64,000 nucleotides of DNA, from positions 806,001 to 870,000 of the forward strand of contig NW_026782351.1 of NCBI RefSeq assembly GCF_031769215.1. Direction: 5' to 3'. Below the pieces are notes generated by a model that had not been told where the DNA came from, searched no databases, and saw only the letters and a program-made list of their open reading frames with translations. Positions 5,449 to 64,000 of the stretch are shown in pieces; the stretch's first letter is position 1; each line of letters begins with the position of its first letter. A program made the translations under genes and the position numbers. Source of the stretch: Ylistrum balloti (Eukaryota).

Positions 5449-22365
<16,917 letters not shown>

Positions 22366-44707: not shown

Positions 44708-47700
44708 ATGGTTGACGCAATCATAATGTTTCACCATGTGCGAGTTAGAATCTCTCAGCTGTTATTGCCACTTTCGGAAACAGTACGAGTTCGTAATTTT
44801 TCAAAGCTGCAAGTGTCTGTTATTTCAAACGGTGGATTTAGCACTCCAAAATCGATCCTGGTGAAAGTGGTTCATGCTGAAAAACAAGAAAAACAATGCA
44901 TCGATGGACGTTATTACACACCTAAGAATTACAAGAGGTTAACATTACACACTACCTGTCATTGGTCCTTGGTTTATATCAAAATCTATCAAACAGGCAT
45001 GGGTCGTGAATTAAAAAAATATTATAACTACTAGCTCAGGCGATTAATTGTAAAACTAAAGGTGCGGCCCCGGTTCCTCAAAAGTTAGTGTGATTTGACA
45101 AGTGGTTAGTGAAAATTGTTTTATTACTACTACTGAACAACCAAGAGTGTTAAATATAAAACAATCACAATATATCTGACCTGTCTCAACAAATATACAG
45201 CTGTGAAATGATGAACCATTTTCAGAAATCTGACAGCTTGTGTTCTGATATAGTGAACATGTAATACATACGACACGTAAACATACCGGACACATGGGGA
45301 CAAATTATTCCTAGATCAATATATGGTACTTGAGAAGTGGGTGGTTAAAGCAAGTAGAAAATACTTGAAACTCATTTTTTTGTTAAAAGAAGGGAAAAAA
45401 TAAAAGATTTGTGACATGTTGGTAATTATCTTCATCTAAATCTTATCCGACTGGGGTACAGCTGAAATAATGCACACTGTCAAAGGCAGTATGCTAAATG
45501 TTGACGTAATGTTTAGGTCAGTATGGTCATTATGATGCCTGGTTACAGCTGTGAATATGACAGTGCCCAATATGCATTGTGTCAATTTGCTTCACATCTA
45601 TATTAATGAAAAGCTGGAAAGAAATCAGGATGATAATGCAATTAATTTGTTACATGGAAATGATATGTATGCAGTAGTATATTTGTGTATATGCAGCTAC
45701 ACACCTGGGGATCCATCATTTGCCTATGATATCCTTCATAATGTCTTACTACTATTTCCTGCGAAGAACTTGGATATCATTCTCTTCATATTTATAAATT
45801 CCCCCTGTCTTTTGATCTACTATTTATTGAGCTATTGATAAAGTAAAAATCGACTTTTTGGATTCTAACTGAAAAGGCTTTTTGCCAGTGTTTCTTCGAA
45901 GAAATGGAGGGAACCTTTTTGCAAATTTCAAAAGTGTATGTGACAGCTTTCTGACTAGAAGGACTGTGTTGCATATGAAGGATGTGATAACTCTCCCTTC
46001 AGGTCCATTCTTACGTACTTGAAAGAATTAGAACTAAAGAGCATATTTAGAGAGTAATACAAAATGAATTGTCAGACTTTGATATCGGGGCATAGCCACA
46101 ATTTTTCTAAGAATACTAATATATGATGTCCCCAATTTCTTTGTGATATGAAGTGCTGTAGACTGTAAGTATGTGTGATGATAAAATTGACGAAGTGGAT
46201 GCGTCATGTTTTTACAGTAATTGAATATTATTTTTCACATACAATTTCCCATTCCTGTGTTTAGATCTACTTAGTTGTCTCTGATTGTGCCAAAGTTATG
46301 AGGATTTTTGGCCTGCTTTTAGAACATGACATAGACATTGTTAGCCTAACAAGTCTGTAAGACTGATAATTTCAAGATGTAGGAACAAGTTATTGCACTA
46401 GTGTTAGGGAACAGGCCTGTAGAAATAGAAAATATATTTAATCTAGAAAGAAAATTAGAAATACGTAGATCTATAAATGCAGTTGAAGTTCTACACCTGA
46501 ATTCAATCTAAACTAGACTTGATGAATATGTATCTTTCTTTTACAGTTACCTGTTTAACTGCGGGGAAGGTACAAAACGAATTTATTCCATAAGCAAGTA
46601 AGTAAAGCTTGTGTTTCTGAGATAGAGTGAGTGAGAAAAAACAGATGGTCTGTTTATTTACTCATTTTCAAGGAAGTATGTCAAAGGTGTAGGTCACATT
46701 GAGTTCAAAGGTCATATTCCTTGTATATGTAGTAAGTTCCAACTTGGTGAAGGTAACGGTAGGTCTATTTTTCATCCCATTTGCAGCTGTGTGTATTTAG
46801 CCCACCATCATCTGATAGTGGGCTATTCAAATGCCTCTGCATCTGTGGTCCGTCCAGGCGTCTGTCCGCCATCTGTAAACAATATTTGTTATCGCTATTT
46901 CTAGATTGATCTTAAGCAAATTGCATATGTATGTTCCCCTTGGTCCCTAGTTGTACCCATTTGATTTTGGGAATGATCAAGAAAACAAAATGACCCACAG
47001 GCAGCCATCTTGGATTTTTTCAATGAAAACTTGTTATCGCAATTTCTTGAAAAGTCATATGTATGTTCCCTTTGGTCTCTCCTTGTGCTTGTTTGCTTTT
47101 GACCAGAAGAAAAAAATGGCTTCCAAATGGCCATTTTAGATTTGGAAGGTGAAGATTATCATTGCTGTTTCTGCAAAGGAATGTTCAAATGTCTTATCAT
47201 TTAGAGCAAAAACAGAGGGGATAAGAAGGGAAAAGATCCAACTTTTAGGGCAAAGCAGTGTTATTAAGTTCTGTTTTAATTAATAGCTAAAGTAAGTATC
47301 TAGTCTATTACTTCTGACTTGCAGAGAGTAGATAATTGAATTTAGGATTAACAGTATTGTTTTGCTTACTACCTTCAGGTTAGTAGACTGAAAGTCAATG
47401 TTATGCTGAGTTACATTATCTGTATATCAAGAGATTTTAATCTACATTGATTCAACATAGCCTATGATTTTTTTACCTTTACTCCAGTTTACGGTGGTTT
47501 AGACTCTATACTTAAGTTTGAACACAGCATCTCCCAGTTTCACAATATTAGTAGTTGCAAATTCATAAGGAATTTAGAAAAAAAAAAAAAAAAACAAACA
47601 AATAAAACCCAGTTAAACAGACATTTGATATGAAATATCTTACTTGTCCATATCACCTTGAATTGAATTAAATGGTGGAGAAATATGTACCATTTGATTT

Positions 47701-50700
47701 ACTTTCTTATAGATTGTCTTCCAACTTTATATTTAATTGTTAATGAAAGAAGTTTTATAATGTACACACTTTAAATATGTAAATAAGTTGTCAACTATTC
47801 ATGAATTTTTCAGACACAAGAAGAATGCCATTGAAGATATTTTTATTACGGTCACAAATTGGGAGAATTTAGGCGGATTGAAAGGTATGTACCTTGTAAG
47901 TTCTGATAGTACTGGGACATACACTTTAAATCAGTTCTTCCTGTCAACATCCTGATGATAAATGTCCAACACTTGATGTCTCCTTTGTGGTGTCTTGATA
48001 ATTACCAATGATAGGTAGACATTCATCTGAAGTTATTTTTCAGAATATCAGCCTTGCTCCAAATTAAAAAAAATTGATTAGGTGAATGTCTCCAGAATGG
48101 GATTTGAGGTGTTGAGAACATACTGAATGGTGTATAAAACTGATGTTGAGGTTAAGGAGTAGATATACTTGTACAATTTAGTTAGATTATGATATGACAC
48201 AATTTTTATATTGATTACTGATTTCCATAAAATTATTGAAATTTATCTTACCAGGGTTACACATATTGCGTGGACATTAATTCATTCTTTTATTATGTAT
48301 ACAGGTTTATTTACTGAACGAGTCAAGTATTTTGAAGGTGAATTCTTCCGTAAAGAGCTTAAGTTATATGGTCCAGAGTTAATGGTAAGACTATATTTTA
48401 TCACATATTAAGTGTTAGACCCTCACACATGTACTAAACAAACCACAGTGCATATAATGTTATTCAACCATTAAAAGAAGACAAGACTTTAAACACGGTT
48501 TTCCTTGGGGTACAGAAAAATTGGAAAGAAAACTATTAGCAAATAAAACATTTGAAGATTTAGTAATAGTTATAAGACTACAGGGCCATACCTGGTCTTC
48601 TTATACAAGTTTCTTTATGTCTAAGTGCGTAAAATAGTATATCATAACAATGCTGGTGTTTGGGGTTTCATCTTAGGTGTCCTATTCTACTAATATACAG
48701 CATGACAAAGAAGTGAAGCACCATTTTGAATTTGTTACAGAAAACAATACTCTACATACAGAATTATCTTGCTTTGTTTTGCTGGGTTTATGACCCGTAG
48801 ACAGCCAGGGTGATTTTTAGGTGGGGTCTCCTTGTGGTAGCTGGTTGCTACCTCCCTGAACAACATACAGGGAGGCCCATTATATTCTATCCAGAGTAAT
48901 AAGGGTAAGGTGTCTTGCCCAAGGACGCAATCACATAAGCAAAAAACTGGTCATTTTCTCAGCTTCCAGGGAAAAGCAAACCAGTACCATGCACATCAGA
49001 TCTTCATCAGACATTGCATAGGTCAACATTCTAACAGACTGAGCTATTGCAGCCTTTCTGAAGTATCCTTTGTGTATGTATCAAAGAAATGATGTTTTTC
49101 TTTTTCATTGTGAATACAAATAAAGGAGAGAGAGAGAGAAAAAATAGAATTAAATCTGAGAAGTATTTTCTAGCTCTCAGCTGAGTTATAGAAACCATAT
49201 TCAACATTCATCAAAGGAACTGGTCAATCTGACTTGTATACTATTATACAAGTCAGATTGACCAGTTCATTTGATATCAATGCTTAAACTGAACATTATT
49301 TACAGGAGGAAGGTAGGACTAATTCTAATTTTAAATTCATTTGTGAAATCAATATTTGACTTTTTCATGAAAATATCTGTTTTTATTCCAACAGTTGGAC
49401 CGCTTCTATGTTGGTAAAGCTCCAGTTTACAGTGAGTATGCCATTGTTACATAGGGTACATTCTAAACCTGGTATTAATGATGCAGTGTAGGTCCTCTTT
49501 AGCACTCTAGTTCATGCATATGCTCAATACACATTACAGTGAATAAGAAATTGTCTTTGAGAGTTTCACCATTCATTTAATTGGCAAGACCGACATGTGT
49601 TATTTGATGAGACAGACTCATGTTTCTTGGAAAGACTTAAAAATATAACTTCAACTGAACAATATCCTCCATTCAGCTGTACTATACCTGGACACATATA
49701 CCATTTACAAGTATGTGTACTGTACCATGTATAAAATGTTTTCTTGTCAGAATGAAACATGGTACCTGTATAGTTGTGGGTGTCATGATACCTTTAAAAT
49801 TACTTTTATTGTTGTCAGAATATACATTTGAAATTGTCCTTAAAATGAAAGAAATCAGTATATCTGAAAAAGGTAGTGCAATGTTATTGTTCTGAATGTA
49901 AGGCATTTAGGTCATCTGACACAAAGATAGTAATTTTGTTTTGTCCATTGTCATGTTCCATGCATAAACTTTTTTCACATTTTAAACTTCTCAAATTCCA
50001 TCAGTGGGGTCCAGCTCATATTTTCCTGAAATCACCCTGAGATCTGTTGATTATTGATTCTGATTTTTCTAAAAAAAAATGTGTATAATTTTTTGATACC
50101 ATTGATGTTTTTAAAGGTTTGGTAAATGCAACAATGGATTCATTCCATGAAGATGAACATGTACAGATAAAGTTCATACCATTTTTTCCTGAACTGTCTG
50201 ATGAAGATTTTAAAGGATATCCACCCAGCGTTATCGATGAAACAAAAAGTGGGTATACTTGATTATTGTCATGATAATATGAAGTTACAATGGCCTCTTA
50301 TAAATGAAGATCAATTAAACGTATTGAAAAAAAATGCCCTTTAATCTTTGTTTAAAATTCTATGGCTGTTGTTATGTTACCCTAACTTACACCTAGTCCT
50401 TAATATGTATTTAATTCTAATGAACCTCTATACTGTATCATTACTAATGCGTAATTTACCAATAGACTGGAAAATTGAAGGAGTACAACCAAAGATGAAG
50501 CGAAGAATGTCCTCCATAGTGTACATACTAAAGGTGAGAGCTACCTTTCTATCTGAGAGACTTGCTGTCAGTTTAAAGTCTGATTACATATGAAGGTGAA
50601 AGGTCAGAGTTGTTAGCTCCTTAAACTTCCTGGAATGGTTTCTGAACATTGATTCAATGAAAGGTAACCAGCCTTGCACCTCATACATTCTCTGTGTATG

Positions 50701-53700
50701 ATGTATTAGTAAAAGCTCCAGGTCAGCGATCCTCCTCTCCTTCATTTGATTTTGTGCTTTCATTTCTATTATACGAAACATTAATAAGGGTCATGTACAC
50801 ATCCTATCAAAGATTACAAACATGACATATTATTTTGTTTGAACAAAGTGATATGTAGTTAAGATTCATTTTTAGGATACATGATAATATCCAGAATTGT
50901 GTTGGTTTTCAATTCATGGTAAATATTTCTTTGACAGTTGAGAGGTGAAAATAACACTCAGCCAGCTATCATGAGTAAGTACATCAGTTGAATTAAGAAT
51001 GATCTACTCTTTCTAAATATCAAGAATGAATCATATATATGATGTATTGATGATCCTGACTGATATTTTGATCTGTGTGAGTTTAAAAATGGTTATGTCA
51101 GGAATTTTAGTTATCAGTCCTTCAACTGCTTTTTTTCCTTGTAAAGGAATAGGGAGCTTTATGTGTTTTGAAACTTTTTCATTTTTATCCCTGTAAAGAA
51201 GTTTATGTCAGTTTCTAAGAAGATGTTTGGTCTGTAGCAACCAGATTGTTGTATAACTAGACAAAATATGTGGTGTAACTCAAAATCATGATAAACATGC
51301 TTGTTGATCATAGAGATTTTCAATGTTGTCTTCGATATTGGGTTAAATACCTGAATTTTTTATATGGAAAACCCCCCCTTTTTTTACTCATTTTATTTGA
51401 ATTTTTTCTCTCATTTTTCTTGTGTTTTTGGACTTCATTTGTCATTTTGAGATTTTGAGAGGGTCAAAGAGGGATCAAACAGTTGATGGAAATCTTGTTG
51501 CAAATGAAGAACAAATAACAGAACTCATGTAGCTTGTACTAAGACAAAATGTATATTTTGGCTTTTCTAGTACTTGATTGCCCAGATAAGAGGTACTTAA
51601 GCAGCCTGTTGGAGTCAGAAGATTTGAAGAAATACCAAAGTGCACAGGGAACATACGTATTCCACTTATCTCCTACCAGTGTAGTAGAAGATCCTAGATA
51701 CAAAACATTCATTGACAGGTAAATTGAAATGTATATCTTTGATTTTGCTGTGAAACACAGATATTACCTAATTGTTCTCTTTTACATAAAGCTAAATATC
51801 AGTCTAAAAACAAGTACTTTTAAGTGGGTATTCAGTATGGTGATGTCTGTCCTCTTCTTTCTTCAGATTTCATAGTTCAAACGAACATATTCATGTGAAA
51901 GAAACGCAAGAACAGCCATTTCACTATCCAATCAGCACTATCCAGACTGCTCTTAATGAATTGGACAATCATGTTTTCCCTCTGCTGCCTTCCTCGGCAA
52001 ACCGGAATGAACACAAATATACTGTATTACGAAGTAAGATGAATAAAGACAAAGTACTGTCAATGACAAGTGGAAAAACTCTAGAGTTTGCCAACAACTC
52101 TGTCAAAATGATCAACAATTTCAGGTTGGTATAAGCATGCCCAGGCATCCAAAATGTAACAAAATCAATAAAAGTTTGTAATTGTCAGGTATCCTGGTGA
52201 CAAATAGTTACATGAATGTAAGGATGATTGACATGGGTTTGTAAATATCTGGTATCCAGGCGACAAATAGCTACATGAATGTAAGGATGATTGACACAGG
52301 TTTGTAACTATCTTGTATATTCCAAAGGGCCAAGTGACCTATTGGCATACCATGGTGTTTCTGGTCCGTCAATTTTTTCAACATATTGCTACTAGCCATG
52401 AGTAACTGAATGTATTTCGACCAAATTTTGTCAGAAGCATCCTTTGGGAAAGTAAAAAAAAATTTGTGTAAATAGTAGGTATAAGCCCCCAAGGGCCTTA
52501 GGGGTAGGGTCAAAATTTGGTATAAATGGTTGGTCTCTGTCCCCTGGGGCAAGAGGGATTGGGCCAACTAGAAAAAATAATTCAAATTCTTTAAAATCCT
52601 ACTCATTCTATAGGGATGATTGGGTTTGACCAATTTTGTCTTAAGCATTCTTTGGTAATGGGTAATCAATTTTGTATAAATAGTGGGTCTTAGCTCCCTG
52701 TGGTAGATAGAGCAATGCCAAAAATTCAAAATAGAGCAAATTCTTAAAAATCTAATTCTCCTGTAGGAATGATTTGGTCTGAAGTATGAATGGTTTCGTT
52801 GACCCCTGGGAAGTTTTCCCTTGTGTGCTTGGATATTTTAGAATTACTTTTCCTTTAGTTTTAATGAAGCAATTTCACTCAAGCAAAACCTGATGAACAA
52901 TCCAGGCCCTATGGGCTTCTTATTTTCTTTGCCTGCACTCGAGCATCTTCATTCCTTAAGAGACTTTCATCAAATCACACTTAAAATGACCAGAATATCT
53001 TGGACAAGTTTGAGTTTCCGGATTGGTAGGTCAAGGTCAAGGTCAAGGTCACTTAATATTTTTAGAAATTTGTTGTAAGCACTCTAGCAGCTTCACTCCT
53101 TGAGGAATATTCACCTATTTTTACACATTCTTTAAACACTTACATATGTGGAACAAGTTCAAGTTGTGGGTTGTTGGGTTGAGGTAAAGGTTACTTACTG
53201 TATTTATATTTTTTGAAAATCATTGTCATCACTCTGATGGCTTCAATCGGAAAGAGATTTTCATCAAAATTCACACACTTTGAAAGCACAAGTTCCAGTT
53301 TCAGGGTTGTTGGGTCAAGGTCAAGGTCAGCATTACTATTGCTCTAGTGATTTCATTTCTTACAGGATTTTGACCAAACCTCACACACTTACAAATGACT
53401 ATAACACATTGTTACACATCAGTAATACTTGTCATACTTACTTATTGCTTTGTTCCATTAACATAAGTTACAAACTAATTGTATATTTTTCTTTTTTCCA
53501 AATTCCACCAGACAGTACCACCTTTATATGGTGTTATGTAAATGAAGTTTAAATATAACTAATGATTTATGTATGTCAGTGATGATGGAAGAAGTTATCA
53601 TATTTAAATTGACCTTTCTGTTTTATAATTAGGGATGTAGCTGTTTCTTATAAGAATGGCATCCAGAAATTACAGAATGCTGATGAGAAATATCTTGGTT

Positions 53701-56700
53701 CAGTCAAAGAATTTGTAAAAAAACAAAAGCGAGATAAAGGTACAAAAAAGTCTTATTTCTTATGTAAAGCATTGCATTACTTTGTGTTTGTGCTGGTTAT
53801 TCAGGTTTTGGACATAATGAAGGAGTTCTGGGGCAATCATTTCAAACTATTAAATGATTGTGTCTCTATTACATTCATTTGTCAAGTGTATTACATTTGT
53901 GTCATTTAAACTCACGTCAAGTTGAAAGTTTAAAAATGTCCTTGAATTCTGATAACTTTACATATACTTAAATTTGGTAGTGCATTGATATTACTTGATA
54001 ATTCATTATGTTATGCTTTGGAAACAAGATTGATGTCCCTTCATTTCCAGTTAGTTTGAACAAGTCAGTAACACTGCCAACAAGTTCCATTCTTGATAGT
54101 TTTTACTGAAAATTTATAGTTAAAGATGAGAATACTTGGAAGGGTGAAGATACATCTATTTATGATCTACAGAACATTTCTTCTGAAAACACATGGCTTT
54201 GTGTGTCTACATATGCAAATGTCATGTAGATCTTGCTGTATGGATCATCATTTGTAGATAGTGTCTACTGACTCAAGGATTTTTGTTTTGCTATGATGAA
54301 GGAATGGAAGCAAGACTTAGGTGTTATTGTTTTGTTTGCATTTGAACCAAACATTCATCTAGATCAGTTTCTGAGAAAATAAATGACCAAACTAAAAGAT
54401 ACTTTGATTAACTCAAATTAGGGCAAAATTTGAGATAATGAGTATTGCAGACCATTTTAGTTGACTTTGAGAATTATCTACAAATCTTCATAAAAAAATT
54501 CTGATTCACATTCCTTCAACAAAAAAAAGTTATTTGATGTATTAAACAGGCTTGTAAAGGATTTAATCAGAATCTGTTTTTGTGTAATTAACCAGTCATT
54601 ACAGACATTGTTATTTTAATGAGACAAAACAGGGACTTAAAGATATATAATTTTGTGGAGTTCTTGTCATCATATGTTTGTACATAAGAGAATTGAAACA
54701 TAATAGATATACTTGTAAATTTTCAGTGGTATACCCAGTTATAACATTCCTAGGGACTGGAGCTACAACATCCACCCTGTTGAGGAATGTGACAGGAATA
54801 TACTTGGAGATAGAGTAAGTTTCAAGGCTGATGACTTTATTCTCTGTATTTAAGAATCTTTCACTCTCTTGGAGATTAATGGAAAACCTTTCACTGGTAA
54901 TAGCAGATAGAGAAGTAGGTATTTTGTTTTACTGGGAATGGTAGATAGATAAATAGGTATCTTTTATTGGTAATGGTGATAAAATGGATATTTTTCACTG
55001 GAAATGGTAGATAGATAAATACATGTAATAATAGATAAATAGCAAACATTTCACTGGTAATGGTTATAAATAGGATGTGTTTCACTGGTAATGGTTATAA
55101 ATAGGATGTGTTTCACTGCTAATGGTTATAAATAGGATGTGTTTCACTGCTAATGGTTATAAATAGGATGTCTTTCACTGCTAATGGTTATAAATAGGAT
55201 GTCATTCACTTGTAATGGTAGATAGATAGATAGGAGATCTTTCACATTCTGACACTTTCTTCTGCCTTACAGCTCATTGCATTGTTTTCACACATTTTAG
55301 CCCAGACGCTGCCATTCTGTTGGACTGTGGAGAAGGCACTTTCATGCAGATGTACCACCACTTTGGTAGTGAGACGAGCAAAATGCTAAGAAAACTCAAG
55401 TGCATCTTCATTTCTCATCTACATGCCGACCACATTGTGGTTAGTGTGAGCCAATAGTTCATACTTTGCTGAGTTAATTAGTAGCACTTTAGTTTCTATG
55501 TGAAATCAAAATTTTAATATTTTGTTTCTTGATGTGAAACTATCTACCGGTATATGAATAGCAAGCATTAGTTTTTAAATTTTTTGTTTTTTTGTACAGA
55601 CTGTACCATTGTACCATTTTATCAGTAGAGAAATCAGAATATTCGACCAATGCTTTTGTTTTTCACATAGAACGAAGAGTTTTAAGAAAAAAAATTCTGA
55701 GTTTCAATTTATTTGTATTGTTCCAGGGTTTAGCTAGTATTCTTAAGCAGAGACACTTGGCATTTAAGGAGATTGGAGTTCCAGTGGAGCCTGTTGACAT
55801 CATTGGAGAGGATGACATGACCAGTTTAATCTATACCATAGAATACTTTGTACCTAATATTTTGCAGGAGACAGTGTAGGTTTATAGAAAATCAGAATAT
55901 TTTGACTTGTGGTCTGCTTTCATCAGCAGCAAAAAGCTTGTATAAGATTCCTCATTTAGACTCAACAGATTTAGATCATTTAGTCCTTGTATACACCATA
56001 ATATTCAATCATTTAATTTCTACAACATGGTTCACTGGTCAAGATTAAAGAAAGGACATACCGGACAATTTCTGCAAAGAAAATCTAACACTTGTTTATA
56101 TTCACATCATGTTATTGGGAATTGAGAGTTATACACCTAATCATACCCAAGCGAAGAAGTTTTGGGGTGCGGGTATACTGGAATCACCAATCTAGATTAA
56201 GTATACACCGTCAACTTCTGCACTTCATTAACTTTTGGTGGTCATCAATAGTCAAGGTTAGTCTCAACTTCACCAGCATAGTCAGTTCAGGTCCAAGATG
56301 TGCATATCTCAATATGAACTAGTCTGAATTTCAAAATGGCTACCAGCAGCCAGTTTGGATTTTGGTATTGAATTTTGTGATGGCAATTTACTGCAGGCTG
56401 CGACATATACTGTACACCAGTTTCGCTCTATAAAAATTTAATGATTTTAAGGAGGTAGTGGAAATTTCACTACTCCTGACTGGAAAAGTGTCACTTAGGG
56501 TAAAGACAAACTTTAGATTGATCCAAAACATATCTATTTATTATGGGGCCAGAGATTTCCCCCTATACAGTAATAATCTGAAGATGGCTGCTAGTAGCCA
56601 TGTTGGATTTTGACATTGGAATTTTGTTATTGTTATTTCCTAAGAACTAATGTAGTGATCGTCATCAGATATTGTGGTTCAGGTAGGGTCTTAATCATGT

Positions 56701-59700
56701 ATGTCACATTGTAAACTTTCTTGGACATTCAAGATGGATGCCATTTTGAATTTGATACTCGAAGTTATTCAGTCTTTCTAGGTCACCATAACAGAATCTC
56801 AGGGTGACCTTTTGTGATACCTTTTTGTTCGGCATTGTCAGTTGTACGTCAGTAAAATTATAACTTTTTCTACTTCTTCTGGAAAACCCCTGAACTGATT
56901 TCACTGAAACTTGGTAGAAACCATATATGGCCAAAGATTTACCAAAACTGTATATTGTATGGTCCCCTGAGGGATGGAGCTAAAACGGTCAAACTGACAT
57001 AAATTTCAGAAATCTCAATATCCAAATATGGTTGAATCAAGTTGTGGATGAAAGGACCCTAAGGTGTTTAACCAAAATTGTTAACTTTAATACTCCCAGG
57101 GTCTTGCATTTCCCCTTGGGAGGGAGTAAAGTTTACTATAGTTTATATAGGAAAATTACTTTTTTGAACATAATATGTTTATTTTTATTGGAAAAAGATC
57201 AAACTTGGTTAGAATTGTTGGTATAGAATGAGAATTTGATGTAATGCACTTATTGACCCTAGCCAAAAAGGGTCAAATTTACAGAAATTTCAAAAGTTTT
57301 GGGTAAAATCTAACACTCTTCATGGATGGAAGGGACATAAAATAAAAATTCTCAATTCCTACACAAATAACATTTCTCATCTGTATACTACATTCACTCC
57401 CGTTGTTTGTGAGTTAACTCGGGTTACTATTTAGGCCCCCTTGGCCTCTTGTGTATGTATAACTGATAGTGCTACAAATCTTACTAAGAACAATAGATCA
57501 TAGATTCATCAAATTCACCATGAATATCTTCTGCATTACAAACATTGCTAACTATGACATTACGTAGAACTTAGGGATTGACTCCAAATATCTATTTACA
57601 ACTGAAATAAAGTGTTTTAAATGTAAATTTCTGCATTCCCTTTCATAAAAACAATTCATTATGATTTACTAATGTGACTGTAGGATGATTGGCCCTGAGG
57701 ATCCTTGGTTTTCTGTTCAGGACTGAATACTGTAGCTCATTTTTATCTCTTTTTAGTTTACATGTATCAAGGAACTTCAGATCAAAAAGGTACATGTCAG
57801 AAATTCATACAAAACTGAACTTGCAAGAGGTAAGATTTCGCAGTTTTATTGACATCAAGGGGGCATTGTGTCTTAACAGCATTCACTATTTTATTTTTTA
57901 TTTTTCATAAATGTTGGTTACTGCTAATAATAACTTATTTTAGTGACCTACAAGTTAGGACATTTCATTGACCTTGACGTTTTGGTAATGTTTTGGGTTT
58001 AGTCAAGGTCATTACATTGACATCAGTAAAACTTGCCATCTTGACTTCAGACTTGCTATCAGTTGTGAAATTGGATCCTTGCGTTTGTTGAACTGAAAGG
58101 AAGGAATAAAAACATTAATTACTAATGCAGCTAATGCATTATTCAGACAGATGTTAATGAGTTTGACTGACTATTTAAGTGGTGTGTTACATCTCAAATG
58201 AATTTGTATCAGTATGTGGTATTAGTTGTGCCATTACTTTGCCTCTTTCCTGTGTTAATCGGTATTCATGCTTGTTTTTCAGTTGACAACTGTTAAAGCT
58301 CTACACAACTTTGGTCGTGCACATTCTGTTTCCATCAAACATGACAGTGGTTGGCACCTAGTGTTTTCAGGAGACACCATGCCATCCGACAGTCTCATTA
58401 GGCTTGGTGAGTTCCCCTCTCTTCTTGTTGAATAATTTAAAGGCTGCTTTAGAACAAACATTTCTTATTGGGTACAGGCCCATGTTCGGCATCCCATCCT
58501 CCTATTTTTCACATCTCCATTCAGCATTATTGTAAAAAGAAACATTGAATAAGAACTCATGCATAATGTCAGTTTTGTTTAAACTGCATTTATCTGTACA
58601 CCAGAATTATTAACAAAGACCATTAGATAATTTTTACTTTTGTGCTGCTGTTTAGTGTACAACACCATGTCTACGTACCTAATTGTGATATTATAATGAC
58701 CTGTTAGGTGTAGAAGATGTGTGAAGTATAGAGGGAAACAGCTCTTGCCCCATTACTGGTAAAATAGGATACATGTTCTCCGGTAATTAAAAGAAAATAA
58801 ACATTAAGTGTTTAAAAGTGATTCAAATGGGTAGAAAGTAAGTTGTGATACCTGCTAGAAAAAAATCCTTAAATTTGTTCACTCGGTAGAAAATCTGTTT
58901 TTTATTGGACAGGTTTTAGATGTGACATACTAATACATGAAGCCACCTTTTCTACACAAGCTGCAGCTGGAGCCAAGAAAAGTCATCACAGGTAAACATT
59001 ATCATTATTCACATTAACTAGCTATGAAATGTTTTGAATCTTTCCAAGTAATTCAGAATGATTCCTTGTCAGTTTTACAGCCAGCATGCAACTAGTCAAA
59101 GCCAGGAACAGTTCAACACTTGAAAATACTAACCTTTTGAGATTTTAACATCACTCTTTCTGACAAGTCAATTTGCAATGAAAATGTTATATTGCATGGT
59201 CACATAACAGTGTACCATGCAATGATATTTTTTCTCTTGAAATATAACAGAAAATGATTCATTCAATTACAAATAGAGCAAACACAGCACATGATGTAAT
59301 AAACAAAATCATACCACAGAATCTTAAACTTTCTTTAGGAAAAATATTTTAACAAGTCTCTGATTTCAGTACTGTAGAAGAAGCAGTGACAACGAGTAAA
59401 CGTATGAAAGCCAAGAAAACCATCTTAACTCACTTCAGTCCACAAACTCTACTGGATGAGAAGAAGTTGATCTTATCACAGACTGATTTAACGATTGCAA
59501 TGGACCATATGAGGGTAAAATTAGTTTTTGGAAGGAAGAAACAAAACATTATATTTTATCATTAATGCTTCAGTTTTTAGTTTTAAAAGTGTGTAATTAC
59601 ACCAATAATTAACACTATTGTTAATTGTTTTTTGTTCTTACCCCATTAGCAGCTAGCTCGCTACAGTAATAAAATCTCCTAAAAATCTGCCATTTTTCCT

Positions 59701-59912
59701 ACAGGCTTTTCTTGGTGCCTACTTTTATAAGTCGGTGATATTTTGTCAATTTATCAGGCTTTCTGAGAAAATGCTGGCATGTTTTATCCAAGTGATCCTA
59801 AATGTTATCATTCTTTTTATTTCAGCTTCAAAGGAGTGATCTGGAATACACACCTCTTTTCAATCCGTTTCTCCTGGAGTTATCAAATTATACGTTCTAC
59901 AGATGGCGTTAG
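44708..59912 (+). CDS. ELAC2: Divergent long-form ribonuclease Z (ELAC2/tRNase ZL-like metallo-beta-lactamase), 700 aa
   Basis: Exons: 44708-44937, 46547-46597, 47814-47884, 48305-48384, 49395-49431, 50117-50248, 50466-50533, 50938-50974, 51571-51718, 51867-52124, 53633-53739, 54727-54814, 55301-55439, 55727-55875, 57757-57829, 58283-58406, 58913-58991, 59370-59514, 59826-59912; sum 2103 nt, phases consistent. Motifs YLFNCGEGT, IFITVTNWENLGGL, LDCPD, YPVITFLGTG, LLDCGEGT, SHLHADH, FSGDT, IHEAT, HST, THFS, AMDHM. Ortholog versus paralog is unresolved. Confidence 0.9.
46796..47150. mobile_element. Helentron/HINE-like non-autonomous element
   Basis: Subterminal hairpin AGCCCACCATC/GATAGTGGGCT (46799-46824), then a GTCC-type microsatellite, then tandem core units. 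This is the usual HINE layout. Confidence 0.65.
48775..48940 (-). mobile_element. SINE fragment
   Basis: GC-richer block ending AAGGTGTCTTGCCCAAGGAC, a motif I recall from invertebrate SINE bodies. Not verified. Confidence 0.4.
49210..49275. repeat. Near-perfect 31-bp inverted repeat with a 4-nt loop
   Basis: GAACTGGTCAATCTGACTTGTATA (49217-49240), CTAT, then its exact reverse complement (49245-49268). Extends 6 more bp past one mismatch. Confidence 0.95.
52188..52316. repeat. 63-bp tandem duplication
   Basis: GGTATCC.GG.GACAAATAG.TACATGAATGTAAGGATGATTGACA at 52188 and 52251. Confidence 0.85.
52325..53480. mobile_element. Adjacent degenerate HINE-like repeats, with GGTCAAGGTCA motifs
   Basis: AAGTGACCTATT head, repeated GACCAA(A)TTTTGTC..AAGCAT units, and GGTCAAGGTCAAGGTCA runs near 53030 and 53313. 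Boundaries approximate. Confidence 0.45.
54889..55245. repeat. 31-bp minisatellite (TTCACTGSTAATGGTTATAAATAGGATGTGT) with longer degenerate flanking units
   Basis: Near-identical copies from 55050 at 31-nt spacing. Confidence 0.9.
56330..57240. mobile_element. Two HINE-like repeats (about 56330-56640 and 56775-57240)
   Basis: AA(A/G)ATGGCT.C.AG.AGCCA..TTGGATTTTG cores and subterminal inverted repeat AGGTCACC/GGTGACCT (56780-56810). Confidence 0.5.
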
Positions 59913-59951: not shown

Positions 59952-60800
59952 CACAGGTGTCAATGAACATTAAAAATACACTAGTGTCCATGAATGGTGT
60001 ATCAATACAGAGATGTTTGTGAATCCTGTTACCATACAAAGAAGTCCATGGATGGTGTTACGATACACAGATGTCCATGGATGGTGTTATGATACACAGA
60101 CGTCCATGAATAGTGTTACGATACATAGACTTCCATGTTTGGCGTAACAGTACACCAAAGTCCATGGGTGGTGTTATGATACTCAGAGATCCATGAGTGG
60201 TGTAACGATACACAGAGGTCCATGGATGATGTAACAATACACTGGTGTCCATGAATGGTGTTACAATACACTGAGGTCCATGGATGATGTAACAATACAC
60301 TGGTGTCCATGAATGGTGTTACAATACACTGAGGTCTATGGATGATGTAACAATACACTGGTGTCCATGAATGGTGTTACAATACACTGAGGTCCATGGA
60401 TGATGTAACAATACACTGGTGTCCATGAATGGTGTTACTATACACTGAGGTCCATGGATGATGTAACAATACACTGGTGTCCATGAATGGTGTTACAATA
60501 CACTGAGGTCCATGGATGATGTAACAATACGCTGGTGTCCATGAATGGTGTTACAATACACTGAGGTCCATGGATGATGTAACAATACGCTGGTGTCCAT
60601 GAATGGTGTTACAATACACAGACGTCAATGAAAGGTGTTACAATACACAGACGTCCATGAGCGATGTTACGGTACACAGAGGTCCATTATTAGTGTAACA
60701 ATACACTGGAGTCCATTATTGGTGTTACCGAAGCATCTTGACAAGACTTCAACAAATCATGGTTTACACATGTCGATGAATGTGTTACATCAAACTTTGC
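59952..60800. repeat. 29-bp minisatellite with a homogenised 58-bp A/B dimer core
   Basis: GAGGTCCATGGATGATGTAACAATACACT alternates with GGTGTCCATGAATGGTGTTACAATACACT from about 60215 to 60620. Monomers are diverged on both flanks. Confidence 0.95.
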
Positions 60801-61899
60801 ATATAACTTGCCAATTTCCATATTTTGTGAGTTGCACCGCACAGGTGTCCATGTTGTACACTCGTACAATTTATAGTTACACTAGTTAGCCTATTGTGGG
60901 AGGTCCTGAAGACCCAGTAAGTTTCGCACCTCCTGTGCATGAAACAATCAAGATCAAAGCTAAACCTGTGATATTATTGTGAACTTCAGTCTTACAATTG
61001 TGTTAGTCTTTTTTTTTTATCTTAATGAGGTCATTACTGTTGGACATTAATTATGAAATATGGGTAATATGAATCTCCAATATTATCTTCCTACCTCAAA
61101 GATGAATTTTTACAGTGATGATGCAGGGATTTGAAATATGAGAGGATATATTCGTGTTTACACATCTTACCATATTCAGTGACATATTTGCTGATTATTC
61201 TCTTAGTAATGTGCATTACCGGTAAATGAAGATTAGGGATTGCAATTTTGATTTGTTTACATTAATGGCAATAACCTGTTAACTTTTCATAGGTGATAAC
61301 ACACAGTTCCTTTTGCCTGCTTGTAATTGCTATGAATAAACCATATCTTACCACAAGATTGGGGCTCAAAGACCAGAATTATACAAAATAATTTGATCTG
61401 TTTGTCTTATAACAGGCTTAACCAGCATGCCACCCACCATTCAGATTAATATTAGATATATTTCATTTAAGCATTACAGATTTTAATATACAAGGACATC
61501 AGTCAGATACATATATGATATATTGAAATGTCCAACCTAGTCATATTTTAACATTTGATTTCTCAATTTTAAGATATTTGCAATGAGTCATATTTACAGA
61601 GAGATGTATTATGTAGAGTACCAATCGAACTATTTGCGCTGTGAGATGTCAACAACACTTCTTATTTATTTGTATTATTTATATGTTTTAATGATGTATT
61701 TGTAATAAATGGAACTGTAGAGAAACAGTCAATATAGTTTGGTTCATGTATGCTTAAAACCAATCATGATAGTTATAGTCAGTTTCAGAAAAATGTACCA
61801 TTGGTTCATATATAATTTACTGTACCATCATGATAGTTCTAGTCAGTGTTGGAAATATGTATTCTTGGTTCAAATACAACATACCAGTCATGTACCAAT

Positions 61900-62700
61900 A
61901 AAGCAAGGACAGTTATAAAAAGGCTCACCAGGAGCTTGGACAAGATGGAAGCTGTTGGAGCAGAAACTTACATGGTATGATCTGTGGCACAAGAGACATA
62001 TGAGGATTTAATTCCTGCAATGATTGATTTTTGACGCTCTACCTTTACCGGGAATTAGCCGACATTCTTGTGAGATAAAAAAGAAAAGGAAGCTGCAGAC
62101 AAGGTACAAACCATCATTCATACGGTTGTAAAAGCAGGGGAGCAGGAAAATGATGCTGCAGCAGAAAACACTGACAATTGGGGAGAGGAACAGTCATGGG
62201 AGATGGGAGTAGACCTAGAGAAGAAACAGGTGTTTCTGGATGTAATGCAGACAACATATGTCCAGATGTGTTGATAGGACCCCATAATCCGGGCAGATAT
62301 TAGTCATCCAGCTGATTGTGCCCTGGGAGGAGTGATGTGACCAGGCTAATGAGAGGAAATGAGCATGCAGAACTCATGATATTGTGTAGGGAGGGAGAGT
62401 GACTTACTTGATCGTTTCCTGTAGAAGTAGGATGCAGAGAGTTCCCAACAACCTCAGCCTGGAGGACACTATAGACTTTGGGTGTATATGAGAAGACTGG
62501 TAAGATGGCAGTGTGCAGATTAGCTGAGGCTGCGGAACGTGCATCATGCTGGTTGTGGAGTAAACTGGAGGAGACTGGAGGCCATCCAATGATGTTTAAT
62601 GAGTTAATTGCCACTGTCAACCCATCAACATGAAGACGTTCCAGGACAAGGTTTGAAATGTCTAGAGGTTGATGAACCCGACTGTTTAGGTGCACAGTTA
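61900..62700 (+). mobile_element. Decayed HERO-like (R2 superfamily, RLE) non-LTR retrotransposon 3' fragment
   Basis: Broken frames give GAWTRW..KLTWYDLW, VVKAGE, SWEMGVDLEKKQVF, VIQLIVPWEE*CDQANERK, FPVEVGCREF, LAEAAERASCWLW. Multiple stops and frameshifts; the zinc-knuckle region appears deleted. Confidence 0.85.
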
Positions 62701-62861
62701 AGCCGGTTTCAGAAAACTATTCGAATGGATGCTAAATAGACATTTTGCCTTACTGGACTTGTCAGATACTATTAACAAATTTTAATGAAATGGCACTGAA
62801 ATTAAGTTGATAATTTCCTTAACACATTGATAGCTTATAAGTATGCAAGGACATAGTTTAA

Positions 62862-63237
62862 TACTACGTGCAAACAGCTAGATGGAATTGCTGCTACACC
62901 GCCGACGTCCTCAGCCAAGGCCATCCTTCATCGCGTGTTTCGACCCCTTACTCGGTACACTCTCAGGATGAGGGGTCCACAGTGGTGACCAGTCTCTGCG
63001 TGTCGGTGGTGGGTCTCCAGCTACTCTCGTCCCCCTTCATCCAAACGCAACAGGATGCCCTCTCTGCTGCCTGGGTGAGCCGCTGCACTGCCCTTCTTCT
63101 AGTACAGCCGGTAACACCCAATGCACTGAGCATTTTCCAAACAGATGCTGCTGGGAAGCCTCTACACCCAATCTCTACCGGGAAGTTCCAAGTTTTCCAG
63201 CCTTTCTCCCTGCATTCTGCTAGTAGCTCTTCATACT
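62862..63237 (-). mobile_element. Young 5'-truncated HERO-like insertion with a 22-bp target-site duplication
   Basis: Stop-free frame 63235->62963: YEELLAECREKGWKTWNFPVEIGCRGF...LTQAAERASCCVW...*. Exact AGTATGCAAGGACATAGTTTAA at 62840-62861 and 63238-63259. Confidence 0.92.
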
Positions 63238-63900
63238 AGTATGCAAGGACATAGTTTAACAATTCAAAAGTGACAAACTATCAGTAAACTATATATAAAT
63301 TGTATTTTATGTTTTGTTCGCCATGGTGATTAGTGAAGATGATTTATTGCAGTCTTGTACAATCCTTCAGCCGTTTAAGTTAGTTCTAGGTGATTTAGAT
63401 TATGATGACAAGGCAAAGAAAAAGAAGGCAAACAAATAGAAGCACATGGCAATGTCAGCTTTACAATAAATATTTGAATGTTAAAGTTTGGTATTTCATC
63501 TGAAGAAGTCTTGGGGCCGTACTGGTTTGAGAGAAAAGAGAAATTACTGACAATGCCTAGGCATCAGATATAATAAAACACTTAAATATCTTCTGATGAA
63601 CTGAAGTTTGTAACATATTTGACTAGTGGCCTCCTGTCACTGGCTCTGAAAATCATTTGGATTCACCTCATAAAAGGGGTACAAGTATAATATAGCTTAT
63701 TGACGAACAGTCTCTATAAACAGCAGTGTTTTCTCTCCACAACTGTGGTGGCATGACTAGCTTGTATATGGAAGAGCAGAATACTAAATACAGGTAAGTT
63801 TTCTATCTATTACACAAAACAAACTCCTGTACCAGTATTTCTAACTTTATTTTATAACTGTGAATCACGCTAAAACATGCTTCGGTCCATCTTCCAAACC

Positions 63901-64000
63901 AAAGGCTCAGTACTCCACAGAGTTGGTGAAAGGCTCAGCACTCCAGAGAAATGGTGAAAGGCTCCGCACTCCACAGAGTTTGTGAAAGGCTCAAAACTCG
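63901..64000. repeat. 28-bp minisatellite running off the right edge
   Basis: AAAGGCTC at 63901, 63929, 63957 and 63985. Confidence 0.85.

What the first reader, a model, noticed from the sequence alone, without database searches (positions are those of the whole stretch)
50466..51718. Long-form RNase Z with no flexible arm (exosite)
Seen: the spliced protein reads ...MSSIVYILK-LRGENNTQ-PAIMILDCPD..., and no phase-compatible arm-like exon was found in introns 50534-50937 or 50975-51570. Established: in ELAC2/tRNase ZL about 55 aa lie between the equivalent strands (human AFICK-LHLKRGNF...GLPVG...LCTPPDPG-AAFVVVECPD). This is the flexible arm that binds the tRNA elbow and strongly lowers Km. 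Inference: this intact 700-aa gene encodes an arm-less ZL nuclease that cannot read tRNA in the canonical way. It may be a neofunctionalised paralog, for example one for degenerate mitochondrial tRNAs presented by partner proteins, or for a non-tRNA substrate.
Basis: partly seen in the sequence, partly recalled or inferred. Interest (0 to 1): 0.85.

Follow-up and report, generated by a model that had tools for sequence, protein, structure and literature searches.

The report
Scallop RNase Z lacking its tRNA arm
Scallops keep, under selection, a version of the tRNA-trimming enzyme ELAC2 that has lost the arm and tail helix that normally grip the tRNA but still has its cutting centre, so it must find its RNA target some other way.

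Summary
The window (Ylistrum balloti, saucer scallop) holds a 19-exon, 694-aa ELAC2/long-form RNase Z gene at 44726-59912 (+). It is identical to the annotated "ELAC protein 2-like".

- **Arm loss.** The ~50-aa flexible arm is replaced by a 37-nt micro-exon (50938-50974). Other molluscs encode the arm in three small exons. Scallops lost two of them and kept a shortened third, with the same splice phase.
- **No hidden exon.** An arm profile finds those exons in abalone and chiton. It finds nothing in the window, the Pecten maximus ortholog or a neighbouring second Ylistrum copy.
- **Conservation.** Pecten has the same 19 exons and the same micro-exon. dN/dS is about 0.21-0.26.
- **Motifs.** All zinc and catalytic motifs are kept. 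[quoted passage not shown]

Most likely this is an active nuclease that no longer reads the tRNA elbow.

"Paralog" is not shown. No arm-bearing ELAC2 from any scallop, oyster, mussel or clam appeared in three searches, so this could be the scallops' only long-form enzyme. No RNA data were available.

Arm-less "tRNase Z-like" proteins were catalogued before in green algae and basal land plants; I found no animal case in the papers searched.

The parts
44726..59912 (+). Whole gene: 19 GT-AG exons, CDS 2085 nt, 694 aa. It is the annotated 'zinc phosphodiesterase ELAC protein 2-like' of Ylistrum balloti.
   Evidence: Exact exon map and translation check. Pfam Lactamase_B_4, Lactamase_B_2 and Lactamase_B all score above their gathering cut-offs.
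44726..44937 (+). Exon 1 (aa 1-70). The N-terminus is Arg/His-rich and nearly free of acidic residues, like a mitochondrial presequence. A charged 20-28 aa insert, specific to this lineage, sits just before the YLFNCGEG strand.
   Evidence: Alignment. This is the least constrained part of the gene (dN/dS 0.43-0.59). Residues 1-25 have low pLDDT.
50466..50533 (+). Exon 7 (aa 195-217), ending ...IVYILK in phase 0. It is homologous to the canonical exon that ends ...ICK, just before the arm.
50534..50937 (+). Intron 7 (404 nt). No arm-like coding sequence in any frame.
   Evidence: Arm HMM on the six-frame translation. The DNA contig is colinear apart from a 10-nt insertion and a 1-nt deletion.
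50938..50974 (+). Micro-exon 8 (37 nt, LRGENNTQPAIM plus 1 nt, phase 0 to 1). It is a remnant of the third of the three ancestral arm exons and now forms a short hairpin loop.
   Evidence: The donor is in the same phase and position as the 52-nt third arm exon of chiton and abalone. Pecten has the same 37 nt with the same splice signals, 70% identical against 47% in the introns. The AF2 model has strand 211-218, loop 219-227, strand 228-231.
50975..51570 (+). Intron 8 (596 nt). No arm-like coding sequence.
51571..51718 (+). Exon 9 (aa 230-278), starting (I)LDCPD. It is homologous to the canonical exon that starts VLECP, just after the arm.
   Evidence: phmmer aligns residue 226 onward to human ELAC2 residue 304 onward.
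54727..54814 (+). Exon 12. The P-loop is degenerate: PxKxRN has become TSTLLRN, so the equivalent of human Lys495 is lost.
   Evidence: Motif table. The role of K495 is described in PMC11602120.
55301..55439 (+). Exon 13. Motif I (LLDCGEGT) and motif II (HLHADH) are intact.
58283..58406 (+). Exon 16. The motif III His is kept although its surroundings are rewritten. Motif IV (SGDT) is kept.
58913..58991 (+). Exon 17. The HEAT motif and the His of the HST motif are kept. The equivalent of human K700 is not.
59370..59514 (+). Exon 18. The motif V His (THFS) and AxDx (AMDHM) are kept. The QRY of HFSQRY, which holds the equivalent of human R728, is lost with a 4-aa rewrite.
59826..59912 (+). Exon 19 and the stop codon. 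The protein ends about 13 residues after ...PLFNPFL, so the basic C-terminal helix and tail of canonical ELAC2 are absent.
   Evidence: C-terminal comparison. The role of the helix is described in PMC11602120 and PMC11996679.

Best explanation
This is a real scallop-lineage gene of the ELAC2 (long-form RNase Z) family, and selection maintains it.

Shown:
- The flexible arm was removed at exon level. Of the three small ancestral arm exons, two were lost, together an in-frame 120 nt. The third was shortened from 52 to 37 nt and keeps its splice phase.
- The protein still has both metallo-beta-lactamase domains and every zinc-ligand and catalytic motif.

Inferred:
- It is an active zinc-dependent endonuclease that can no longer clamp a tRNA between arm and helix.
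- It most likely still cuts RNA 3' of a helix. Recognition would run through the two-domain body, a partner protein, or both.
- It probably works in mitochondria. The N-terminus looks like a presequence, there is no second start codon, and there is no basic C-terminal tail.

Open: whether it sits beside a canonical ELAC2 or has replaced it in scallops.
For: - Gene model and arm absence.
- Exon homology and phase.
- Pecten maximus ortholog (70% aa identity) has the same 19 exons and the same 37-nt micro-exon with conserved AG|...|GTAAGT.
- dN/dS is 0.21-0.26 at dS 0.75-0.89. The N domain gives 0.17-0.24 and the C domain 0.18-0.27.
- Of the differences listed in exons 5-10 between the read contig and the assembly, 3 are synonymous and 1 is not.
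- Motifs I-V, HEAT, HST and AxDx are kept in both species. The equivalents of K495, K700 and R728 and the helix are lost.
- The AF2 model has pTM 0.82. Its best structural matches are human ELAC2-tRNA complexes (E 1e-49, TM 0.71). The Atlas model agrees.
- Pfam domains score above their cut-offs.
Against: - There is no expression evidence. The one public run that holds the region is DNA.
- In human ELAC2, deleting the arm abolishes (PMC11996679) or lowers (PMC11602120) pre-tRNA cleavage. Residual tRNA activity here is therefore an assumption.
- Mitochondrial targeting rests only on N-terminal composition.
- A dN/dS of about 0.2-0.25 is only moderate constraint. One maximum-likelihood estimate for the C domain was unstable (0.68).
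- The stem branch is about ten times the median branch (3.17 substitutions per site). That fits a change of function as well as a change of recognition mode.
Confidence: 0.5

Rival explanations
1. This is not an extra paralog but the scallops' only long-form RNase Z. The ancestral ELAC2 evolved very fast in this bivalve lineage and lost arm and helix. Pre-tRNA 3' processing is then done by this arm-less enzyme, by the short form ELAC1, or by both.
For: - Three large searches ranked canonical ELAC2 of gastropods, cephalopods, a chiton, unionid mussels and Solemya at the top. None listed an arm-bearing ELAC2 from Ylistrum, Pecten or any other pteriomorph or imparidentian bivalve (one search scored 4571 ELAC2 proteins).
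- The only other Ylistrum ELAC2-like gene is also arm-less.
- Intron positions and phases match canonical molluscan ELAC2.
Against: - Only the best 120 hits are listed and the prefilter works by shared words, so absence from the lists is weak evidence.
- The genome itself could not be searched.
- The tree does not place the scallop clade inside molluscs. The AU test gives p = 0.019 against molluscs plus scallops as one clade. That points to an older paralog, or to long-branch attraction.
- Synteny with the chiton, abalone and unionid loci was uninformative.
Confidence: 0.35
2. This is a neofunctionalised paralog that has left tRNA metabolism. It keeps the RNase Z catalytic centre but acts on another RNA or on a small phosphodiester substrate.
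For: - Every element shown by mutagenesis to hold pre-tRNA in human ELAC2, apart from part of the N-domain basic patch, is gone: the arm, K495, K700/R728 and the helix arginines (PMC11602120).
- The stem branch is very long.
- The gene was duplicated locally.
- Arm-less tRNase Z-like proteins of algae and basal plants were judged unlikely to have tRNase Z activity (PMC3161902).
Against: - No alternative substrate-binding module or new domain is visible.
- The equivalents of K99 and K101 are kept in Ylistrum.
- RNase Z enzymes with the arm removed still bind and cut pre-tRNA, with altered site choice. This rests only on the title of Minagawa et al. 2008 as cited in PMC3433465.
- A canonical copy, which this reading needs, has not been shown.
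Confidence: 0.25
3. This is a decaying or catalytically irrelevant duplicate, on its way to becoming a pseudogene.
For: - Constraint is only moderate (dN/dS about 0.2-0.25).
- The neighbouring copy B shows decay: the motif V His has become Asn, the gene model is split, and exons 14-15 were not found.
- There is no expression evidence.
Against: - All 19 exons are open, with GT-AG sites, in two species separated by dS of about 0.8.
- All catalytic residues are kept in both species.
- Exons are 70-82% identical while introns are 47% identical.
Confidence: 0.05
4. The missing arm is an artefact: a missed exon, an alternative isoform or an assembly error.
For: Arm-less isoforms or partial models of arm-bearing genes do exist among vertebrate annotations, for example the Gekko, Macaca and Turdus entries.
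Against: - The arm HMM finds nothing on either strand of the window, the 56-kb Pecten locus or the paralog locus. The controls were positive.
- The structure is the same in two species and in a paralog.
- A read-derived contig is colinear with the region.
Confidence: 0.03

Closest known systems
Human ELAC2 (long-form RNase Z; PDB 8RR3, 8Z1G, 9EY1)
   Same: Both have the two-domain metallo-beta-lactamase fold (Foldseek E 1e-49, TM 0.71). Both have an inactive N domain with the tRNase Z N-terminal Pfam domain. The C domain carries HxHxDH, motifs I-V, HEAT, HST and AxDx. C-domain identity is about 30-35%.
   Different: The scallop protein has no flexible arm (human 250-298) and no C-terminal helix (human 772-792). 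The equivalents of K495, K700 and R728 are lost. It has no basic tail and no second start codon. Its stem branch is about ten times longer than the median.
tRNase ZL-like proteins (TLPs) of green algae and basal land plants (PMC3161902)
   Same: [quoted passage not shown] Their function is unknown.
   Different: The scallop gene has an independent, animal origin, with intron positions of metazoan ELAC2. The plant survey gave no evidence on selection or exon history, and it judged TLPs probably inactive.
Capitella teleta CteTRZ2, 'tRNase ZL-like' (PMC3433465)
   Same: It is a lophotrochozoan ZL-like protein with a defective arm, found beside a normal ZL. Its size (738 aa) is similar.
   Different: It is reported only as lacking the GP motif, not the whole arm. 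No relative of it ranked near the scallop proteins: the best non-scallop hit is 34% identical and has an arm.
Arm-less short-form tRNase Z of Basidiomycota (PMC2942849) and the Thermotoga maritima type
   Same: Both are natural RNase Z enzymes with a missing or much reduced arm. The TM type also lacks the PxKxRN motif.
   Different: Both are short forms that work as dimers. The TM type keeps an arm of about 30 aa with a basic cluster and has variant HEAT and HST motifs. The scallop protein has no arm at all, and its HEAT and HST motifs are normal.
Engineered arm deletions (human ELAC2 delta 250-298 and delta 249-302)
   Same: Almost exactly the same segment is missing.
   Different: The engineered proteins lose or lower pre-tRNA cleavage in vitro (PMC11996679, PMC11602120). 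The natural scallop protein has been kept by selection since before Ylistrum and Pecten split.

Membership tests
Long-form RNase Z (tRNase ZL / ELAC2) | Two tandem metallo-beta-lactamase domains, the N-terminal one inactive | tested here: met
   Pfam PF13691 scores 35.8 bits (cut-off 27) and PF12706 scores 59.8 bits (cut-off 27). The AF2 model matches human and yeast long-form structures over the full length.
Long-form RNase Z (tRNase ZL / ELAC2) | Catalytic motifs in the C domain: motif I Asp, HxHxDH, motif III His, motif IV Asp, HEAT, HST, motif V His, AxDx | tested here: met
   All are present in Ylistrum and Pecten. H469, H471, D473 and H474 fall in invariant alignment columns.
Long-form RNase Z (tRNase ZL / ELAC2) | ELAC2-type flexible arm (about 50-62 aa with a GP motif) in the N domain | tested here: not met
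   There are 6 residues where 262 of 273 relatives have about 50. The arm HMM scores -1.2 bits against a median of 74. There is no arm exon in the locus.
Long-form RNase Z (tRNase ZL / ELAC2) | PxKxRN loop (P-loop) | tested here: not met
   Only RN is kept. The Lys is Leu in Ylistrum and Thr in Pecten. The Pro is kept only in Pecten.
Long-form RNase Z (tRNase ZL / ELAC2) | Basic C-terminal helix that feeds the 3' trailer into the active site | tested here: not met
   The protein ends 12-13 residues after the conserved ...PLFNPF(L/F)L, while canonical proteins run on for 35-60 more.
Long-form RNase Z (tRNase ZL / ELAC2) | Endonucleolytic removal of pre-tRNA 3' trailers | not testable with these tools
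   This needs an enzyme assay.
tRNase ZL-like proteins lacking the arm (TLP, as defined in PMC3161902) | ZL-sized homolog that lacks one or more conserved tRNase Z elements, typically the flexible arm, while keeping the others | tested here: met
   694 aa, arm absent, catalytic motifs present.
Thermotoga-type (TM-type) tRNase Z | Short arm of about 30 aa with a basic cluster, and variant or absent HEAT, HST and PxKxRN motifs | tested here: not met
   There is no arm of any kind, HEAT and HST are canonical, and the protein is a long form.

The most novel reading that the evidence does not exclude
Scallops, and perhaps a wider set of bivalves, have no canonical ELAC2 at all. Their only long-form RNase Z lacks both tRNA clamps, the arm and the C-terminal helix, yet still matures mitochondrial and possibly nuclear tRNA 3' ends. 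It would do so by a recognition mode not seen in any characterised RNase Z, for example by reading the acceptor stem alone or through a co-evolved partner.
Probability: 0.25. Interest if true: 0.8.

Novelty: new variant of a known kind. Interest (0 to 1): 0.6.

Why it matters
The flexible arm is the signature substrate-binding module of RNase Z, and removing it from human ELAC2 abolishes or lowers tRNA processing in vitro. Scallops offer a natural protein in which arm, C-terminal helix and several tRNA-contact residues are gone. It has been kept intact by selection, with a complete catalytic centre, in at least two genera.

That makes it a ready-made test case for two questions. Which parts of the long-form enzyme are really needed for substrate recognition? 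Can RNase Z enzymes take up other substrates?

If it turns out to be the only long-form enzyme in scallops, it would show that essential tRNA 3' maturation can be rewired in an animal lineage.

The exon history also gives a clean example of a protein module being deleted by exon loss.

Tried and rejected
- **Hidden or alternative arm exon.** Rejected by the arm HMM on six-frame translations of the window, the Pecten locus L002 and the paralog locus L001, with positive controls. The one weak L001 hit (E 10) lies upstream of exon 7 and is chance.
- **Misassembly.** Rejected by a colinear 3716-nt read-derived contig and by the identical structure in Pecten.
- **Pseudogene.** Rejected for this copy.
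- **RNA evidence.** The splice junctions therefore remain unconfirmed by reads.
- **Search for a canonical scallop ELAC2.** Three homology searches, two name look-ups of unnamed hits (the named ones are nemertean, frog, coral, monitor lizard, oomycete, hemichordate, fungi, fish, sea anemone and insects) and the scan's own notes gave nothing either way.
- **Synteny as a test of orthology.** CEP131 - gene - APH is conserved between the two scallops. The chiton neighbours differ, and the abalone and unionid flanks showed no identifiable neighbour within 10 kb.
- **Unnamed exon-sized fragments most like the scallop exon.** P0004 (loci L005 and L006) comes from an unknown organism with very short introns, not from a scallop.
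- **Phylogenetic placement.** It is unresolved within protostomes. The AU test is marginal and confounded by the long branch.
- **Literature.** No paper links ELAC2 or RNase Z with bivalves or scallops.
Full report
**What is there**

The + strand of the window between 44.7 and 59.9 kb carries an ELAC2-type gene. One exon (55296-55433) matches human ELAC2 residues 507-551 at E 4e-15.

A search of 1.8 billion representative proteins with that exon returned a 694-aa protein, P0001. All of its residues are encoded exactly in the window. I resolved all junctions. The gene has 19 exons, every intron is GT-AG, and the 2085-nt CDS translates to P0001 plus a stop.

A source names the protein 'zinc phosphodiesterase ELAC protein 2-like [Ylistrum balloti]', the saucer scallop. 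It lies on scaffold JAUZWB010000470.1 at 850726-865912. CEP131 is upstream and an APH-domain gene is downstream.

**The observation**

- In an alignment of 273 long-form RNase Z proteins, 262 have about 50 residues between these two strands. The scallop protein has 6.
- A profile built from those 262 arms scores a median of 74 bits on 362 of 376 proteins of 430 aa or more. It scores below zero on the scallop proteins.
- The other proteins without an arm hit are two unrelated proteins, vertebrate isoforms or partial models, an oomycete cluster, one metagenomic protein and one unidentified 857-aa protein.

I ran the same profile on six-frame translations. It recovers the arm exons of abalone (L003) and chiton (L004) at E 1e-7 and about 1e-4. 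It finds nothing in the window, in the 56-kb Pecten locus or in the paralog locus.

A 3716-nt contig built from reads of the one public run that holds this DNA is colinear with 48524-52229. It differs by about 1% substitutions and a few small indels.

**How the arm was lost**

In chiton and abalone the arm is encoded by three small exons. They lie between an exon ending ...ICK (or ...LCQ) and an exon starting VLECP (or VVECP).

From the splice sites I read these sizes:
- The first two arm exons together are an in-frame 120 nt in the chiton.
- The third is 52 nt and ends in phase 1, inside the codon before LECP.

The scallop micro-exon ends at the same position in the same phase, and its last residues (PAIM) align with the canonical KAII. 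So micro-exon 8 is the shortened third arm exon (52 down to 37 nt), and the first two arm exons are gone. About 135 nt, or 45 codons, were lost.

**Conservation**

Pecten maximus has an ortholog, P0151 (702 aa, 70% identical).
- It has the same 19 exons and a 37-nt micro-exon with the same AG|...|GTAAGTACA signals.
- Exons 7-9 are 70-82% identical at the nucleotide level. The introns between them are 47% identical.
- Over 688 codons, dN/dS is 0.21 (NG86), 0.26 (YN00) and 0.25 (ML), with dS 0.75-0.89.
- Both domains are constrained, at 0.17-0.27. One maximum-likelihood estimate for the C domain (0.68) was unstable.
- Within Ylistrum, the listed differences in exons 5-10 between the read contig and the assembly are 3 synonymous and 1 non-synonymous.

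A second Ylistrum gene, P0002, lies 15-35 kb away on the opposite strand, beyond the APH gene. Its gene model is split into two pieces.
- It is also arm-less, with a micro-exon of 31 nt by my reading of the splice site.
- It shows decay. The motif V His has become Asn, AxDx is altered, and exons 14-15 were not found.
- Arm loss therefore came before this duplication.

**What is kept and what is lost**

Kept in both species: motif I, HxHxDH, the motif III His, motif IV, HEAT, HST, the motif V His and AxDx.

Lost:
- the Lys of PxKxRN (human K495);
- the Lys two residues before the HST His (human K700);
- the QRY of HFSQRY (human R728);
- the whole basic C-terminal helix and tail.

According to PMC11602120, these residues, together with the arm (R250, R251, K279) and helix residues R781, R782 and R785, form the surfaces that hold pre-tRNA. 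Mutating them lowers cleavage. The equivalents of K99 and K101 in the N domain are kept in Ylistrum.

PMC11996679 reports that deleting human residues 250-298 abolishes processing of a canonical mt-tRNA. It also abolishes processing of a degenerate, TRMT10C-SDR5C1-dependent mt-tRNA, because the arm also contacts TRMT10C.

The AlphaFold2 model has pTM 0.82 and mean pLDDT 78. It shows a strand (211-218), a nine-residue loop (219-227) and a strand (228-231) where the arm would emerge. Its best matches are human ELAC2-tRNA complexes (E 1e-49, TM 0.71) and yeast Trz1. Pfam places the protein in the tRNase Z family, with scores above the cut-offs.

**Interpretation**

The conserved catalytic centre under purifying selection argues for an active zinc nuclease. 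The loss of both clamps and of the trailer-guiding residues argues that it cannot bind tRNA in the known way.

The N-terminus has several Arg and His residues and almost no acidic ones. There is no downstream start codon and no basic tail. This suggests a protein that works only in mitochondria, but that is inference from sequence alone.

**Paralog or ortholog**

This could not be settled. Three searches listed canonical ELAC2 from gastropods, cephalopods, a chiton, unionids and Solemya. None listed one from any scallop, oyster, mussel or venerid clam. Only the best 120 hits are shown, and the genome could not be searched.

In the tree, the scallop pair sits on a stem of 3.17 substitutions per site, against a median terminal branch of 0.35. 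It falls inside protostomes but is unresolved there. An AU test marginally rejects grouping it with molluscs (p = 0.019). The group was chosen after the tree was seen, and a long branch is involved.

Microsynteny is conserved between the two scallops but was uninformative against other molluscs.

**Comparison with what is known**

- Arm-less 'tRNase Z-like proteins', including ZL-sized ones, were catalogued in green algae and basal land plants and judged probably inactive (PMC3161902).
- Arm-less short forms occur in Basidiomycota (PMC2942849).
- One annelid ZL-like protein lacks the GP motif (PMC3433465).
- No paper in the library links RNase Z or ELAC2 with bivalves.

The scallop gene is thus a new, independently derived animal variant of a loosely known kind. 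Here it is documented with its exon history, its selection and the concurrent loss of the C-terminal helix.

**Limits**

- There are no RNA reads, so splicing and expression rest on conserved exon structure and on the public annotation.
- There was no whole-genome search.
- Function and localisation are inferred.

Noticed in passing
L001:10001-30235 (Ylistrum scaffold JAUZWB010000470.1, about 880984-901218, minus strand; not in the window): This is a second arm-less ELAC2-like gene, 15-35 kb beyond the APH gene and convergent with the window's gene. It is annotated as two models, of 454 and 169 aa. Its micro-exon is 31 nt. The motif V His has become Asn and exons 14-15 were not found, so it is probably decaying.
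   Followed up: partly
window 52274-53437 and 48782-48975: Contig depth in the DNA run jumps from about 10 to 200-750 here, with many internal joints. These stretches are high-copy repeats, presumably transposable elements, inside introns 10 and 4.
   Followed up: no
L004:19713-20450 (Liolophura sinensis ELAC2 intron): Several partial copies of the exon that encodes motifs I-II (KYMLLDCG ... LENLTAVFV) lie at a spacing of 312 nt just upstream of the real exon (20462-20599). This is a tandem array of pseudo-exons.
   Followed up: no
window 44726-44937 (exon 1): A charged insert of 20-28 aa, specific to this lineage, sits directly before the YLFNCGEG strand. Paralog B and canonical ELAC2 lack it. 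Human R82, which contacts the tRNA stems, lies at this spot. The insert is poorly conserved between Ylistrum and Pecten.
   Followed up: partly
proteins P0403, P0467, P0213, P0247 (vertebrate entries): Some annotated vertebrate ELAC2 isoforms or partial models lack all or part of the arm. Arm-skipping transcripts may exist in arm-bearing genes, or these entries may be annotation artefacts.
   Followed up: no
search results: No ELAC2 from any pteriomorph or imparidentian bivalve appears among the best hits, while other mollusc classes, unionids and Solemya do. ELAC2 may be unusually divergent across these bivalves, or the word prefilter may have missed them.
   Followed up: partly
window 1-44000 and 60000-64000: CEP131 lies upstream and an APH-domain gene lies just beyond the window's 3' end. 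The order CEP131 - ELAC2-like - APH is the same in Pecten maximus.
   Followed up: partly
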